Shown: piece by piece, positions 13,378 through 63,734 of the stretch | How positions within the stretch are numbered: the first letter of the stretch is position 1 | How the letters are laid out: each line of letters begins with the position of its first letter | Assembly (NCBI RefSeq): GCF_040938485.1 | Contig: NW_027270897.1 | Location: 1,178,001-1,242,000, forward strand | DNA: 64,000 nucleotides | Direction: 5' to 3' | Source of the DNA: Diadema antillarum | Taxonomy: Eukaryota | Made by a program: the position numbers and the translations under genes | The notes under the pieces: model-generated | Database searches by the model: none | Told to the model about the DNA's origin: nothing | Seen by the model: only the letters and a program-made list of their open reading frames with translations

Positions 13378-13483
13378 ATGGCATCTCACATGAGGAGGAA
13401 AAAACAAGAAACGAGTTCTTCATCGGAGGACGAAGCCGAAAGTGAACGGCTGTCTTCGGCTGTTTGGAACCATGATTCATTCA
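13378..13483 (+). CDS. C12orf43: CUSTOS exon 1 (MASHMRRKKQETSSSSEDEAESERLSSAVWNHDSF)
   Basis: ATG at 13378 (alternative at 13390); donor A|GTAAGA at 13484. Confidence 0.75.
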
Positions 13484-16400
13484 GTAAGACCAAGAGAACA
13501 AGCCCTTAAATGTATCGATGTTAACTTTTTTTGCCTTGTCAGTTCTGCAGAAACCCAGCCAAATTGACCAAACTAAGTGCTGGGGACATTGACCAAATGC
13601 AAGGCCCAAGCCCCGTATGTTCAGATTTGTGTCAGCAGCAGTTTTGTATAGAATCTCTGTCTAGCGCTTGCGTAGAAGCGTATAAGATGCTCCCATCCGC
13701 CACAGTATAACTGTGTACAAGGAGCGCCCCGGCCCGGGGTTAGCTAGACATTCATTAAAGCAGTCTGATATGTTGCAGTAAAATGGATTCAGTTTCCTGG
13801 ATATGGAGGAATTCATGGTCATTCCTCTATTATTAAAGCCTTTAATAAAGGATTATTCTGCCCCAGGGCCAGGGAGAGCTAGAGTAGGCCTAGCTACACG
13901 CAGCCGCTGTAGGGACAGCGGCTGCACCTCCATTCCTTCGCAGACGTTGTCATTTTTCAGTGTGGTTGTGCGACTCCTTCATAAATATCTTTATTAATCG
14001 TGGAAAACTAAAATACAAGGAATCATCGTAATCTATGCTAATCATTCAATAATTGGTATGCAATTTTTTGTTTAATTACGTCAAAAACTCACCGAAATCT
14101 GTGGCTGAAATCAGGTCTGTAAACGTCCTTATTGCTTCACTCCTCATCTGCGTGTTATTTGAATGGCATTCACTCTCGTATACTACAACGTACAACGTAG
14201 GTAGTCGGAGAGGCGCCCTCTAGCTCTCCGACTACCTATGTTGTACGTTGTAGTATACGAGAGTGAATGCCATTCAAATAACACGCAGATGAGGAGTGAA
14301 GCAATAAGGACGTTTACAGGCCTGATTTCAGCCACAGATTTCGGTGAGTTTTTGACGTAATTAAACAAAAAATCGCGTACCGATTATTGAATGATTATCA
14401 TAGATTACGATAATTCCTTGTATTTTAGTTTTCCACGATTAATAAAGATATTCATGAAGGAGTCGCACAACCACACTGAAAAATGACAACGTCTGCGAGG
14501 GAATAGAGGTGCAGCCGCGTCGCTTCGCGACAGCGGCTGCGTGTAGTTAGAGTAGGCCTAGATCTAAGCAAACAATGAATGATGTTTGTGATATTGATAC
14601 AGTTAATTCGCATTCGTACGTACGTGCACGAGTTATGATTAAAATGAGACAGTCGATGAATATAAGCGTGATACAAATTTCTAAATTCTGTAAAGTTTAC
14701 TAGCTAGACCACATTTTATAGAGATCTACATACTTTTGTAGATGTTCTCGTGGAGATGCAGAAATTCCACATATTTACATTAATTTTCAAGTATTTTGCA
14801 CTACTTCTGGCTAGCACACATTCTGAAATGTGTGAGTGATTTTAATGTGATAATATCTTCACAATTTTTTGAGCAGGTTGAATCATGTGCTTTGTCCCTG
14901 TGGTATGAGTGTGTCTGTGTGTGTGTGTGAGCATGTGCCAAAGTACGGTATTGGTGGTATTTGTTTCAGTGCATGCTTGTATGCAGTACAAATCATGAAA
15001 TGCAGTTTTGTGTGTGGGCCGTGGCCGTACATTAGAATGGATTGGGCAGTGTTTCCCGTCAAATTTCGTGCAGGGTGATGTCAAATCATACTCTGTCATT
15101 TTTGTGAATTAGATGAAAACATACACGATTAAGTAAGCAATTGCTTGGTGCGAATATGTTTTTGAGCCGCTCAGTGCAAAAAAAAAAGAATGAATTGTGT
15201 GAAAATATGAACATTTACAGTAGTCTAATTGAATATTACCATGTCTTTTTTTTATTATTATTATTTTCTCTTTTTTTTTACAGTGCCGAATTTATTCGCT
15301 TCTTGCATTTGGTATGCATCTGTGCTGTGTGTAAATTGTAATTCTTTGATACCTTTTGAATATCATTTTCATCTCTTTGTTTCTAATTTTCTTGATTTTA
15401 AAATGTGTGATATTACAACTTTGTAAATGTCTCCTTCCTTTTGAGTGACTGCAGTCAAGTGGAGTTAATTGTTATGTCACTTTCAAGGAGGTCGGCATAG
15501 CACATTTTATTAATTGATGATTTTAAGTTCAATTAGCTTGTGTCATTGAGGGTAAATGAGTGAATAAAACCAATATCTACACAAATATTGAAATAAAACC
15601 AATATCTAAACAAATGAATAAAATAAATGTCTTGAACCTGTGAAATTTCATAAAGAGGAGAATTTTTACTGGCTACAAAATCACAGTCCGAGTACAGACT
15701 TTAACTTTTAGTCAAAGAAATAATTGATTAAATTGATTTTATGTATCATTCAGTCATTTTGATGAAGGCATACCCTTCTTATGTCCATTCCAAGATGGAG
15801 AAACATTCTTCACCCTGAATGTTGGAAGCTTTTTAAGATTTCATTCTGGAGACACACCACAAATGATGCATATATTTATGTACTATCAGCAGTGTGCAGT
15901 TCTATCTCACCTTCAATACATTTTGACTTTCAGGTCAAAATAGGCGGGCCCAGCAAAAATCCACACTACTCTCATCCGGACAAAATGCCTGTGTTAAAAC
16001 GAAGTCTGTTGTCACTGATAAGCCCAGCATCAGGTAATGACTTGTGATACTGTAATGTTTCATGAAGTGAAGTCAAGACCAGCCACAGTTTGATATCCAT
16101 TGTCTACAGCAAAGATATTACCTTAAAGTACTGTAGATGCCAAATATTTTGCTTGCATAACATTTCATGAATTGGGAGTGTCAAGACAATGTCCATGGTG
16201 TTTAAATTTGCAATTGGGCAGGTGAATATCGTACTGGTAGCATGCACTCGGGATACAGGCGTGCATGTGCACGTACTAGGCTGGGCATGTGTGCAGCTGC
16301 TGCCTGCCCATCTTACTGTCACATGTACATACACTGCTTTCATACTCAGTACTGTAACCAGAGGGTGATATTTTGGTGGGTTGTTAAATTGGCAATTATT

Positions 16401-62200: not shown

Positions 62201-63734
62201 AATCCGGGCAGTTAATATCGCTACAACAATGTATTATGCATGGAATGTTTGAATGTAAGTAACTGGAATAAGCGAGGACATTACGTTATATTTTCATTAC
62301 GAGACATTAGACATCTTCATGAATCAAGTGGGTCTTTTTTATGGATTTCATATTTTTTAGTTCATTTGGGGATTCCAAAATTCGAAACTCACGCATTGCA
62401 CTGGATCACCAGACTTTCTCGCTCCTCCTTGCTCGGATTCCGATTCAGGTTGTAGGCGTGGTACAGGATTCGCTGTGAGGCAGGGCCCCACTTGAAGCGA
62501 TTTCTCCGCTGTTTCTTCGCCGGGTTCTCCTCGGTGGTGAAGACGTAGTGACCAGTGTCGGGGTTGGTGAATTCTGCAAGCACGTACATTGTATTGAACA
62601 AAANNNNNNNNNNNNNNNNNNNNNNNNNNNNNNNNNNNNNNNNNNNNNNNNNNNNNNNNNNNNNNNNNNNNNNNNNNNNNNNNNNNNNNNNNNNNNNNNN
62701 NNNNNNNNNNNNNNNNNNNNNNNNNNNNNNNNNNNNNNNNNNNNNNNNNNNNNNNNNNNNNNNNNNNNNNNNNNNNNNNNNNNNNNNNNNNNNNNNNNNN
62801 NNNNNNNNNNNNNNNNNNNNNNNNNNNNNNNNNNNNNNNNNNNNNNNNNNNNNNNNNNNNNNNNNNNNNNNCAAGTTTTACTTCATCATTGTTTCCATGT
62901 CATTGAAGCCGTGACGTGCAACCTATACCAAACAAGGAATACTGATACAAATACATTGACCGCTTTCCCAAAAGTTTTGATTTATTAATCATGGAGCTAT
63001 TTCCTTCCCCCAAAACACAAGAATTTCTATTTGAAAAAAGTTATATATCATAATTGATACCAGCGCATGGGGATTCAACTAAACTTCGTAATTTCATTTG
63101 GAGTAAGTTTCATGCTTTCATTTTTTTTTTGTTCTTAATAATACCGTATATTACAATCCCCGCGGAAGTAACATTTTTCTCAACCCGAATAATGACAAAA
63201 GATCAAAACAGAAACAGAAAAACGAACAAACTATTATCCCATCCCAACAATCTCCACAAAAGTAAAGAATAGCAGTTAATATTATAAACATTTGCTGTAA
63301 AATGCGATTAATTGAATGTTTGAAGAATTTACTACGGTGGGGTGACAACTTTGGTAATACATTATACTCTTGAATAAAATGAATCAAAACGATGTAGGAC
63401 CTAAGTGATAGCGGCAATTGATATAGCACTAAATACATTATTCATGATTCAAGCAAGAGACATATTACTATGCGTAATATCATTGTCAGTAGTATTGAAG
63501 GCATAAAGTGCATGAAGTGATGTGTTTGACCTACGTTTCATGACTTCCTTCTGTTTCTTGTCATACCAGTCATAAAGCATGGCACGCTTTATGCTCTTCA
63601 TGGGCGTTCCCTTGTTCAAATGCTGCGAGAGATGTGATTGGTTGAGCCCCGTGGCATCTACCACTTCTCTCTGGGGGATGTTATGTTGCTGCATGTACAT
63701 CTTTATCATCTTTGCCACCTGCCAGGGGTCCTGC
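47027..63734 (-). CDS. HNF1: Hepatocyte nuclear factor 1 (HNF1A/HNF1B pro-orthologue), 5'-partial: join(63734-63535,62573-62393,55072-54888,53710-53436,52231-52051,49371-49033,48261-47830,47226-47027); first (dimerisation) exon lies beyond the window
   Basis: 1993 nt open after splicing, all GT-AG. POU-specific [45 protein letters not shown]; atypical homeodomain [17 protein letters not shown]...[51 protein letters not shown]; KLPSVS motif; Q/S-rich C-terminus. Confidence 0.95.
47830..48261 (-). CDS. HNF1: HNF1 exon with Q26 tract
   Basis: Acceptor tttctttttccccag; donor G|GTGAAT; phases 1/1. Confidence 0.85.
48703..48910. mobile_element. Old reverse-orientation copy of the CTGTA MITE family
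   Basis: gagttaaatttctcatgaatcaggacttcccaacaattt...gttaaatt matches the reverse complement of the right arm at 43988-44221 after CpG decay. Confidence 0.5.
49033..49371 (-). CDS. HNF1: HNF1 exon with Q14 tract
   Basis: Acceptor tatgtacacag; donor CAA G|GTTGGT; phases 1/1. Confidence 0.82.
49897..49980. mobile_element. 85-bp piggyBac-like MITE, copy 4
   Basis: TTAA at 49893-96 and 49981-84; right TIR CGTCCTCAACGGG intact. Confidence 0.85.
51500..51960. repeat. Purine-rich degenerate minisatellite (~140-170-bp units with GAA/GAT runs)
   Basis: gatgct.tcaaa recurs at 51501, 51641, 51809, each followed by gta.aggcagga / atc..gaagatgct / gaagaagaaaaga blocks. Confidence 0.7.
52051..52231 (-). 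CDS. HNF1: HNF1 exon ([14 protein letters not shown]...APQSG)
   Basis: Acceptor ttcgctacag; donor G|GTGAGT; LPxVS motif as in vertebrate HNF1. Confidence 0.88.
53436..53710 (-). CDS. HNF1: HNF1 exon (GVETSPVSS...DGSTL)
   Basis: Acceptor tcagtgtcag; donor TTG|GTACGT; phases 1/0. Confidence 0.85.
54888..55072 (-). CDS. HNF1: HNF1 exon, homeodomain helix 3 ([12 protein letters not shown]...[11 protein letters not shown])
   Basis: Acceptor acccacag; donor G|GTAAGA. Confidence 0.97.
56408..56598. repeat. (TCTA)n / GATA-type degenerate microsatellite
   Basis: Direct. Confidence 0.9.
58241..58359. mobile_element. Short Harbinger-like MITE (GG.CCCTGTTTTAT...ATAAAACAGGGCCC)
   Basis: 14-bp inverted termini. 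Confidence 0.6.
58505..58547. repeat. (ACACG)n imperfect microsatellite
   Basis: Direct. Confidence 0.75.
59279..59436. mobile_element. Tc1/mariner (Tigger-like) MITE, TA-CAGTCAAAC...GTTTGACTG-TA
   Basis: TA at 59277-78 and 59437-38; TIRs. Confidence 0.85.
61553..61645. repeat. (CA)/(CG) compound microsatellite
   Basis: Direct. Confidence 0.9.
62393..62573 (-). CDS. HNF1: HNF1 exon, linker and homeodomain helices 1-2
   Basis: Acceptor gcttgcag at 62574-75; donor GC|GTGAGT at 62392. Confidence 0.95.
62604..62871. other. Assembly gap (N run)
   Basis: Direct. Confidence 1.
63535..63734 (-). CDS. HNF1: HNF1 exon, POU-specific domain (200 bp)
   Basis: Acceptor catttgcag at 63735-36; donor C|GTAGGT at 63534. 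Confidence 0.97.

What the first reader, a model, noticed from the sequence alone, without database searches (positions are those of the whole stretch)
13378..63734. CUSTOS (C12orf43) and HNF1 are tail-to-tail neighbours, as human C12orf43/HNF1A are
Seen: a six-exon CUSTOS orthologue on + and HNF1 on -, with no other intact gene recognisable in the ~26.6 kb between their stops (only TE relics). Established: human HNF1A and C12orf43 are immediate convergent neighbours on 12q24.31. Inference: this pair may have stayed linked since before the vertebrate genome duplications, with the HNF1A (not HNF1B) locus keeping the ancestral neighbour. It fits a developmental-TF plus housekeeping-bystander regulatory block, in which HNF1 enhancers in or near CUSTOS would prevent separation. 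I do not know whether this linkage has been described outside vertebrates.
Basis: partly seen in the sequence, partly recalled or inferred. Interest (0 to 1): 0.72.

Follow-up and report, generated by a model that had tools for sequence, protein, structure and literature searches.

The report
Sea-urchin CUSTOS and HNF1 neighbours
In the sea urchin Diadema antillarum the CUSTOS and HNF1 genes lie tail to tail as they do in fish, birds and humans, so the pairing probably predates vertebrates, but two other sea urchins have broken it, so it is an ordinary inherited neighbourhood and not a proven regulatory lock.

Summary
The window is Diadema antillarum. On the + strand lies an intact six-exon gene (13378-20427, 392 codons) that is the CUSTOS/C12orf43 orthologue. 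A profile built only from vertebrate CUSTOS picks out four of its exons, in order, as the top four of 2,220 window ORFs. A profile built only from urchin proteins finds only CUSTOS proteins. On the - strand lies HNF1, from exon 2 to the inferred last exon (63734 down to 47027); exon 1 is outside the window. The assembly gap sits inside HNF1 intron 2, and the exons on either side of it join in frame. The 26.6 kb between the two stops holds transposon relics, a satellite and one doubtful database gene model. CUSTOS and HNF1A are also convergent immediate neighbours in a whitefish, a gar and a pheasant. A TPT-family transporter gene lies head to head with CUSTOS in Diadema and in two sharks, which suggests an ancestral three-gene block. 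In Strongylocentrotus purpuratus and Lytechinus pictus, however, CUSTOS has different neighbours on both sides, and no HNF1 exon lies within about 10 to 20 kb. Ancestral linkage is therefore likely. The regulatory-block mechanism is untested and somewhat weakened. No searchable paper describes the pair. This is a new member of a known kind, of moderate interest.

The parts
6309..9218 (-). TPT-family (SLC35-type) transporter gene with three coding exons, head to head with CUSTOS. Exon 1 coding sequence runs from 9218 down to 8657.
   Evidence: Pfam TPT E=1.4e-25 on the ORF at 8616-9248. The same gene lies in the same place in D. setosum. A TPT gene also lies head to head with CUSTOS in two sharks: 33% identity over 180 aa, with the first intron at the same position and phase.
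13378..13483 (+). CUSTOS exon 1: start codon and acidic Ser-rich N-terminus
   Evidence: The donor GTAAGA starts at 13484. Matches the N-termini of the D. setosum, S. purpuratus and L. pictus CUSTOS proteins. Vertebrate-only HMM E=2e-4. 94% identical to D. setosum, against 59% for the following intron. Missing from the NCBI D. antillarum model.
15934..16033 (+). CUSTOS exon 2
   Evidence: tblastn with D. setosum P0012 gives 91% identity. GT-AG sites keep the frame open. 94% nucleotide identity to D. setosum.
16735..16848 (+). CUSTOS exon 3, carrying the most conserved motif of the family (TPE[FM]R..VAKKL)
   Evidence: Pfam PF23999 CUSTOS gives 17.8 bits, E=0.0024, on this exon alone. Vertebrate-only HMM E=2e-5. 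It is the only CUSTOS stretch that aligns to L. pictus DNA.
17518..17594 (+). CUSTOS exon 4
   Evidence: Present in P0001 and P0012. Splice sites keep the frame open.
18439..18571 (+). CUSTOS exon 5 (F[KR]L[LF]..S motif, Pro run, basic patch)
   Evidence: tblastn with P0001 and P0012. Vertebrate-only HMM E=0.007.
19779..20427 (+). CUSTOS exon 6: second acidic Ser motif followed by RL.EAA.SG, then Lys-rich tracts. Stop codon at 20425-20427.
   Evidence: 100% identical to NCBI D. antillarum P0001. Vertebrate-only HMM E=5.9e-10.
23589..23661 (+). tRNA-like sequence, probably a SINE head or a pseudo-tRNA
   Evidence: Rfam tRNA gives 31.6 bits against a threshold of 29. ARAGORN finds no tRNA gene.
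27282..28810 (-). hAT-like transposase relic broken into four ORFs in different frames. NCBI calls a 264-aa gene on part of it (27282-28391).
   Evidence: The ORFs lie in different frames. The four best PDB matches are all Hermes transposase, E about 0.05. No Pfam hit. The gene call is listed. Part of the relic lies at the same place in D. setosum.
31165..32404 (-). Probable DDE-transposase relic (Tc1/mariner-like motif), two ORFs in different frames
   Evidence: ORFs. No Pfam or PDB match, so the assignment rests on a short motif and is an inference. Present at the same place in D. setosum.
35559..36335 (.). 158-bp satellite, about 5 copies
   Evidence: Tandem Repeats Finder. 70-82% similar to a repeat in an intron of the gene upstream of L. 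pictus CUSTOS.
47027..47226 (-). Inferred last HNF1 exon, with stop TAG at 47029-47027
   Evidence: ORF plus acceptor AG at 47228-47227. No homology or transcript support, so this is inferred.
47771..53807 (-). Gln/Ser/Thr-rich ORFs that probably hold the HNF1 activation-domain exons (within 53418-53807, 52046-52270, 48971-49510 and 47771-48460)
   Evidence: ORFs on the right strand and in the right order. No Pfam HNF-1A_C or HNF-1B_C match. Exon borders were not determined.
54888..55072 (-). HNF1 exon 4: C-terminal half of the atypical homeodomain
   Evidence: 70% identical to whitefish HNF1A, E=5e-28. Splice sites read.
62393..62573 (-). HNF1 exon 3: N-terminal half of the homeodomain
   Evidence: 62% identical to whitefish HNF1A, E=6e-21. 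Weak Pfam Homeodomain match to profile positions 1-36. Splice sites read.
62604..62871 (.). Assembly gap (N) inside HNF1 intron 2
   Evidence: The gap lies 28 read bases upstream of the exon 3 acceptor. It was not filled and no lookup was made.
63535..63734 (-). HNF1 exon 2: POU-specific-like domain
   Evidence: Pfam HNF-1_N E=1.3e-32, profile positions 115-173 of 175. 63% identical to whitefish HNF1A. Splice sites read.

Best explanation
The + strand gene is the Diadema orthologue of vertebrate CUSTOS (C12orf43). The - strand gene is the single echinoderm HNF1. Their tail-to-tail adjacency is homologous to the vertebrate CUSTOS/HNF1A adjacency: it was inherited from the common ancestor of echinoderms and chordates, before the vertebrate genome duplications. 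It probably belonged to a three-gene block in which a TPT-family transporter gene also lay head to head with CUSTOS. Diadema keeps all three genes together, bony vertebrates keep CUSTOS-HNF1A, and sharks keep at least TPT-CUSTOS.

The linkage is not obligatory. In the camarodont urchins S. purpuratus and L. pictus, CUSTOS has different neighbours on both sides.

Shown: gene identities, adjacency and orientation in each species sampled.

Inferred: common ancestry of the arrangement. Also inferred, at about even odds, is that retention was mostly passive, helped by very tight spacing in vertebrates and slow local rearrangement in Diadema, and was not enforced by HNF1 enhancers inside CUSTOS.
For: CUSTOS identity:
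- The six exons give an open frame.
- An exhaustive phmmer search with the annotated protein finds only urchin proteins that their sources name CUSTOS.
- An urchin-only profile finds fish CUSTOS at E=5e-9 and nothing that is not CUSTOS.
- Pfam CUSTOS passes its threshold on the D. setosum orthologue (35.3 bits against 27.4), which is 82-91% identical to the window's exons 1, 2, 3, 5 and 6. It also passes on S. purpuratus.
- A vertebrate-only HMM ranks exons 6, 3, 1 and 5 as the four best of 2,220 window ORFs, collinear with the model.
- Exons are 87-96% identical between the two Diadema species, introns 59-85%, and dN/dS is 0.44.

HNF1 identity.

Adjacency in vertebrates:
- Whitefish: 0.7 kb apart, convergent.
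- Gar: 1.1 kb apart.
- Pheasant: 2.7 kb apart.
- Human: gene order given in PMC3009678.

TPT gene head to head with CUSTOS: Diadema and two shark orders, with the same intron position and phase.

Camarodont break.
Against: - Only one echinoderm genus shows the adjacency. In D. setosum the fetched flank stops short of HNF1.
- The two other urchins sampled lack it within 10 to 20 kb.
- No starfish, hemichordate, amphioxus or protostome could be examined.
- HNF1 was not seen within 10 kb of shark CUSTOS. Those genes are 19-34 kb long, so this is uninformative.
- Orthology of the shark and Diadema TPT genes rests on 33% identity, position and one shared intron, not on a tree.
- The 3' end of HNF1 is inferred.
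- No transcript data exist for the spacer.
Confidence: 0.8

Rival explanations
1. Genomic regulatory block. Enhancers that drive HNF1 in gut and endoderm lie in or around CUSTOS (and perhaps the TPT gene), so selection against separating HNF1 from its enhancers has held the genes together for more than 500 million years.
For: HNF1 is a developmental transcription factor and CUSTOS is a broadly expressed gene. That is the pairing typical of such blocks (Irimia et al. 2012, PMC3514665, abstract seen). The adjacency and orientation are the same in Diadema and in three vertebrate lineages. Several 60-110-bp intronic stretches of CUSTOS are at least 95% identical between the two Diadema species against a background of about 83%.
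Against: - Camarodont urchins have moved CUSTOS away from both of its neighbours and kept the gene.
- The Diadema spacer is filled with transposon relics and a satellite.
- No HNF1 consensus sites lie in CUSTOS or the spacer: 3 in the window against 6 expected.
- No non-coding match between Diadema and L. pictus was found in CUSTOS.
- In vertebrates the genes are 0.7-2.7 kb apart, so neutral retention there is easy.
- No paper reporting HNF1A enhancers in C12orf43 was found.
Confidence: 0.3
2. Independent, chance adjacency. CUSTOS and HNF1 came to lie side by side separately in the Diadema lineage and in vertebrates.
For: Two other urchins lack the adjacency. Only one invertebrate genus shows it.
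Against: With roughly 20,000-30,000 genes, the chance that one given gene acquires the same neighbour in the same orientation is of the order of 1 in 10,000 or less (my estimate). A second neighbour, a TPT-family gene head to head with CUSTOS, is also shared with sharks. Both flanks differ in camarodonts, as expected if CUSTOS moved there.
Confidence: 0.05
3. Assembly artefact. The join between the CUSTOS side and the HNF1 side of the window is a misassembly of repeat-rich sequence.
For: The spacer is repeat-rich. The window has two N gaps. The adjacency was seen in one assembly only.
Against: No gap lies between 3135 and 62603, so CUSTOS and HNF1 exons 3 to last are on uninterrupted sequence. 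The first 12 kb of the spacer is collinear with the independent D. setosum chromosome assembly.
Confidence: 0.03

Closest known systems
Vertebrate CUSTOS (C12orf43) / HNF1A convergent gene pair (human 12q24.31)
   Same: The same two orthologous genes in the same tail-to-tail orientation with nothing conserved between them. Seen here in whitefish, gar and pheasant. Human gene order is given in PMC3009678.
   Different: The spacer is 26.6 kb of transposon debris in Diadema, against 0.7-2.7 kb in the vertebrates sampled. The urchin has a single HNF1, from before the HNF1A/HNF1B split. The upstream neighbour of CUSTOS differs from bony vertebrates, but its type matches that in sharks.
Ancient conserved microsynteny and genomic regulatory blocks (Irimia et al. 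2012, PMC3514665; Touceda-Suarez et al. 2020, PMC7530604)
   Same: A developmental transcription-factor gene next to an unrelated, broadly expressed gene, conserved between phyla.
   Different: Those papers' main texts do not mention HNF1 or C12orf43, and their supplementary tables are not held. No enhancer evidence exists here, and the pair is broken in two urchin species.
Deuterostome pharyngeal gene cluster (nkx2.1, nkx2.2, pax1/9, foxA with the bystanders slc25a21 and mipol1), cited from my own knowledge of the hemichordate genome literature
   Same: Endoderm-related transcription-factor genes kept beside unrelated bystander genes in ambulacrarians and chordates.
   Different: That cluster has several transcription factors, known conserved non-coding elements, and wide sampling across deuterostomes. 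This is a two- or three-gene block seen in one invertebrate genus.

Membership tests
CUSTOS (Pfam PF23999) | Scores above the curated Pfam threshold (27.4 bits) | tested here: inconclusive
   The window could be tested only exon by exon. Exon 3 alone gives 17.8 bits, E=0.0024. Exon 1, and the ORFs holding exons 5 and 6, give no Pfam hit on their own. The full-length D. setosum orthologue, 82-91% identical to window exons 1, 2, 3, 5 and 6 (exon 4 not measured alone), scores 35.3 bits, S. purpuratus 49.7 and P0002 55.9.
CUSTOS (Pfam PF23999) | Reciprocal best relationship with vertebrate CUSTOS | tested here: met
   A vertebrate-only HMM of 102 sequences ranks the four CUSTOS exon ORFs first among 2,220 window ORFs, collinear with the model. 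E-values run from 6e-10 to 7e-3, and the next hit has E=0.31. An urchin-only profile finds only CUSTOS proteins in 5.8 billion sequences. The combined profile's top 120 hits all carry PF23999, except the truncated D. antillarum model P0001 itself.
CUSTOS (Pfam PF23999) | Collinear motif series: acidic Ser-rich N-terminus, TPEFR..VAKKL, FRLF, Pro run with basic patch, a second acidic Ser motif followed by RL.EAA.S, then Lys-rich tail | tested here: met
   Alignment A2 of urchin and fish proteins has 27 invariant columns falling in these motifs. The corresponding window exons were mapped.
CUSTOS (Pfam PF23999) | Binds Dishevelled and beta-catenin and acts in Wnt signalling (Komiya et al. 2014, as summarised in PMC5464927) | not testable with these tools
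   A biochemical property. Only the review's summary could be read. The original paper is not held.
HNF1 (HNF-class homeobox) | POU-specific-like domain (C-terminal part of Pfam HNF-1_N) | tested here: met
   E=1.3e-32, 114 bits against a threshold of 29.7, profile positions 115-173 of 175.
HNF1 (HNF-class homeobox) | Atypical long homeodomain split over two exons | tested here: met
   Exons 3 and 4 are 62% and 70% identical to whitefish HNF1A at E=6e-21 and 5e-28, with exon borders at the same places.
HNF1 (HNF-class homeobox) | N-terminal dimerisation domain (exon 1) | not tested
   Exon 1 lies beyond position 64000. Only about 265 bases of intron 1 are in the window.
Ancient conserved microsyntenic pair / genomic regulatory block | Same two orthologues adjacent, in the same orientation, in distant lineages | tested here: met
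   Diadema (this window), and whitefish, gar and pheasant.
Ancient conserved microsyntenic pair / genomic regulatory block | Adjacency kept across several independent invertebrate lineages | tested here: not met
   In S. purpuratus and L. pictus the flanks of CUSTOS carry other genes and no HNF1 exon. Other phyla could not be sampled.
Ancient conserved microsyntenic pair / genomic regulatory block | Regulatory elements of the transcription-factor gene located in or beyond the bystander gene | tested here: inconclusive
   Only weak proxies were available: a few highly conserved intronic blocks between two close species, no Diadema-Lytechinus non-coding match, and no HNF1-site enrichment. No chromatin data.

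The most novel reading that the evidence does not exclude
TPT transporter <-> CUSTOS -> <- HNF1 is an ancient deuterostome regulatory block in which HNF1 gut enhancers sit within or around CUSTOS. On this reading the human C12orf43 region would be part of the HNF1A regulatory landscape, which matters for reading disease-association signals that fall in C12orf43. The camarodont urchins would then be a natural experiment in which the block was broken and HNF1 regulation had to be rebuilt.
Probability: 0.25. Interest if true: 0.55.

Novelty: new member of a known kind. Interest (0 to 1): 0.36.

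Why it matters
If the linkage is ancestral, it dates the CUSTOS-HNF1A neighbourhood of human 12q24.31 to before the echinoderm-chordate split. It also shows that the HNF1A copy, not HNF1B, kept the old neighbour after the vertebrate genome duplications. CUSTOS is then not a vertebrate invention: echinoids have a clear orthologue, which databases already name but whose D. antillarum model is truncated.

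The contrast between Diadema (block kept) and camarodont urchins (block broken) gives a direct way to test whether such pairs are held by shared regulation or are simply survivors.

As it stands, this is one more conserved gene pair among the hundreds already catalogued. It is useful to comparative genomics and modestly so to those who interpret the HNF1A locus.

Tried and rejected
- **Pfam on single CUSTOS exons and on the annotated 293-aa protein.** No hit except exon 3. The family signal needs the N-terminal exons that the NCBI model lacks.
- **First word search with the last exon.** It found only the protein itself.
- **RNA evidence.** Neither the exon 1-2 junction nor transcription of the spacer could be tested.
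- **CUSTOS in other phyla.** The combined profile gave 999 hits, but the 120 shown were all vertebrate or urchin.
- **HNF1 in S. purpuratus, L. pictus or D. setosum.** It could not be located. The word search accepts only proteins of similar length to the query, the window offers only single HNF1 exons, and the contig look-up needs an exact full product. Walking from CUSTOS reached about 19 kb in S. purpuratus.
- **Non-coding conservation.** Sensitive blastn and tblastx between Diadema and L. pictus found only exon 3 and a shared repeat.
- **HNF1 binding-site scan.** 3 matches against 6 expected.
- **Papers.** No hit for C12orf43 with synteny or microsynteny, or for HNF1 with microsynteny. Supplements of the two microsynteny surveys are not held. 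The original CUSTOS paper is not held.
- **The S. purpuratus 871-aa neighbour of CUSTOS.** No counterpart in the Diadema window and no Pfam domain.
- **Considered and rejected: the 264-aa NCBI gene call in the spacer is a real intervening gene.** It sits on four out-of-frame ORFs whose best structural relatives are Hermes transposase. D. setosum has no gene call in the 10 kb downstream of CUSTOS that was fetched, which includes the homologous stretch.

Full report
**What is there**

The window is from Diadema antillarum. The last exon of the + strand gene is 100% identical to an NCBI protein of that species, on a 5.65-Mb contig. Earlier notes of this scan also name the species.

The + strand gene has six exons with canonical GT-AG borders: 13378-13483, 15934-16033, 16735-16848, 17518-17594, 18439-18571 and 19779-20427. 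Together they give an open frame of 392 codons.

The NCBI model for this species (P0001, 293 aa) lacks exons 1-3 and starts at an ATG just inside intron 3. The model for the sister species D. setosum (P0012, 390 aa) has all six exons and is 82-91% identical over exons 1, 2, 3, 5 and 6.

Between the two Diadema species the exons are 87-96% identical and the introns 59-85%. dN/dS is 0.44. So the gene is intact and under moderate constraint.

I joined the exons only inside scripts, to test the frame and to compute dN/dS. In one search I pasted the N-terminal part of P0012 into the script instead of reading it from file.

**Is it CUSTOS?**

- An exhaustive phmmer search of 1.84 billion representative proteins with P0001 found only three relatives. 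Two are named by their sources: 'Protein CUSTOS' (S. purpuratus, UniProt) and 'protein CUSTOS-like' (L. pictus, NCBI).
- A profile made only of urchin sequences found fish CUSTOS at E=5e-9 in a 5.8-billion-sequence database, and nothing that is not CUSTOS.
- Pfam PF23999 (CUSTOS) passes its threshold on the D. setosum, S. purpuratus and P0002 proteins. It gives E=0.0024 on window exon 3 alone.
- Fish and urchin proteins align with a collinear series of motifs.
- As an independent reverse test, I built an HMM from 102 vertebrate CUSTOS proteins only and searched all 2,220 stop-to-stop ORFs of the window. The top four hits are the ORFs holding exons 6, 3, 1 and 5. All are on the + strand and match successive parts of the model (E = 6e-10, 2e-5, 2e-4 and 7e-3). 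The fifth hit has E = 0.31.

The orthology claim is well supported.

**HNF1**

On the - strand, exon 2 (63734-63535) matches Pfam HNF-1_N at E=1.3e-32. Exons 2, 3 (62573-62393) and 4 (55072-54888) are 63%, 62% and 70% identical to the corresponding exons of whitefish HNF1A, in the same order.

Exon 1 lies beyond the window end. The Gln-rich C-terminal exons, and the stop at 47029-47027, are inferred from ORFs and splice sites only.

**The assembly gap**

The N run at 62604-62871 lies in HNF1 intron 2, with 28 read bases between it and the acceptor AG of exon 3. Exon 2 ends in phase 1 and exon 3 supplies the other two bases. The junction reproduces the Gln-Phe-Thr junction of fish HNF1A. So the two sides are in the right order, on the right strand and in frame. 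The intron length is unknown.

No gap lies between CUSTOS and HNF1 exons 3 to last, so the adjacency does not depend on the gap.

**The spacer (20428-47026)**

It holds:
- a hAT-like transposase relic in four frames (27282-28810). Its best PDB matches are all Hermes transposase, weakly, at E about 0.05;
- a probable DDE-transposase relic at 31165-32404, which is inferred only;
- other short ORFs with no family match;
- a 158-bp satellite;
- a tRNA-like sequence that ARAGORN does not accept as a tRNA gene.

The NCBI annotation calls a 264-aa gene on part of the hAT-like relic. The D. setosum annotation calls nothing in the 10 kb fetched downstream of CUSTOS, although parts of both relics lie at the same places there. 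No RNA run was listed, so 'no intervening gene' remains a sequence-based judgement.

**Is the linkage shared?**

Contig look-ups with vertebrate CUSTOS proteins show CUSTOS followed by a convergent gene carrying HNF-1_N and HNF-1A_C:
- whitefish, 0.7 kb away;
- gar, 1.1 kb away;
- pheasant, 2.7 kb away.

PMC3009678 gives the human order HNF1A-C12orf43-OASL. That the human pair is convergent is my own knowledge.

In two sharks the 10-kb flank does not reach any downstream gene. There the CUSTOS genes are 19 and 34 kb long.

**An unexpected addition**

In both sharks, the gene upstream of CUSTOS and head to head with it is a TPT-family transporter. The same holds in both Diadema species. The Diadema and shark first exons are 33% identical over 180 residues (E=2e-27) and end at the same position and phase.

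This suggests an ancestral block: TPT <-> CUSTOS -> <- HNF1. Orthology of the TPT genes is probable but was not tested with a tree.

An earlier, unchecked note places SFSWAP a few kb before the window. From memory, human SFSWAP is also on distal 12q, which would fit wider synteny.

**The counter-evidence**

In S. purpuratus and L. pictus the upstream neighbour of CUSTOS is an alcohol-dehydrogenase-family gene. The downstream, convergent neighbour is an uncharacterised gene of 871 aa in S. purpuratus and 993 aa in L. pictus. The two products share a C-terminus, 83% identical over 86-87 residues. A kinase gene follows in S. purpuratus.

None of the Diadema HNF1 or TPT exons is found in those loci. 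The 871-aa gene has no counterpart in the Diadema window.

Vertebrates serve as the outgroup, so the Diadema arrangement is ancestral and the camarodont one is derived. CUSTOS there has parted from both old neighbours, at least on the 10-20 kb scale. I could not find where HNF1 lies in those genomes.

**Mechanism**

Common ancestry of the adjacency is the best reading (about 0.8). Chance convergence is very unlikely, given the same partner, the same orientation and a second shared neighbour.

Why the pair was retained is open. The regulatory-block idea fits the kind of genes involved. Against it:
- the pair is broken in camarodonts;
- the spacer is transposon-rich;
- no HNF1-site enrichment was found;
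- no deep non-coding conservation was found;
- the vertebrate genes sit so close together that breaks between them are improbable anyway.

A few intronic blocks at least 95% identical between the two Diadema species are leads only. I put the regulatory block at about 0.3 and mainly passive retention at about 0.5.

**Novelty**

No paper in the searchable library links C12orf43 or CUSTOS with HNF1 synteny or microsynteny. The two main microsynteny surveys do not mention either gene in their main text, and their supplementary lists could not be read.

Urchin CUSTOS orthologues are already named in databases. The finding is therefore a new member of a well-known kind, a conserved microsyntenic pair. 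Two things are added here: the third gene, and the break in camarodont urchins.

Noticed in passing
window 6309-9218 (-) with 13378 (+); L007 1-7628; L010 1-3896: A TPT-family transporter gene lies head to head with CUSTOS in both Diadema species and in two sharks (Chiloscyllium, Cetorhinus). Identity is 33% and the first intron has the same position and phase. This suggests an ancestral three-gene block. From memory the gene resembles SLC35E4; I did not test that.
   Followed up: partly
window 13378-16848 against P0001: The NCBI D. antillarum model of this gene (293 aa, 'uncharacterized protein') lacks exons 1-3 and starts at an ATG inside intron 3. As a result it carries no Pfam CUSTOS hit. 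The D. setosum model is complete.
   Followed up: yes
window 27282-28391 (-): The NCBI annotation calls a 264-aa gene on a frameshifted hAT-like transposase relic. It is probably a false gene model.
   Followed up: partly
L005 22947-25562 (-); L004 25793-26069 (-): S. purpuratus and L. pictus share an uncharacterised, mostly disordered gene (871 and 993 aa; LOC115926781 in S. purpuratus) convergent with CUSTOS. It has repeated basic K/R-rich ...RRSVRL-type motifs and a conserved C-terminus, and no Pfam domain. It is absent from the Diadema window.
   Followed up: partly
window 35559-36335; L004 7177-8217: A 158-bp satellite in the spacer is 70-82% similar to repeats inside an intron of the gene upstream of L. 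pictus CUSTOS. That is an unusually old shared repeat family for urchins this distant.
   Followed up: no
window about 3646-3768 (+): A degenerate fragment encoding the first 41 or so residues of histone H3 (PDB H3 matches at E about 1e-11), with several substitutions and no histone fold after it. It is probably a pseudogene fragment, and it lies next to the N gap at 3002-3134.
   Followed up: partly
window 15060-19159, CUSTOS introns: Seven or eight intronic stretches of 60-110 bp are at least 95% identical between D. antillarum and D. setosum, against a background of about 83% (for example 16070-16179 and 19070-19159). These are candidate regulatory elements, but two close species give little power.
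   Followed up: no
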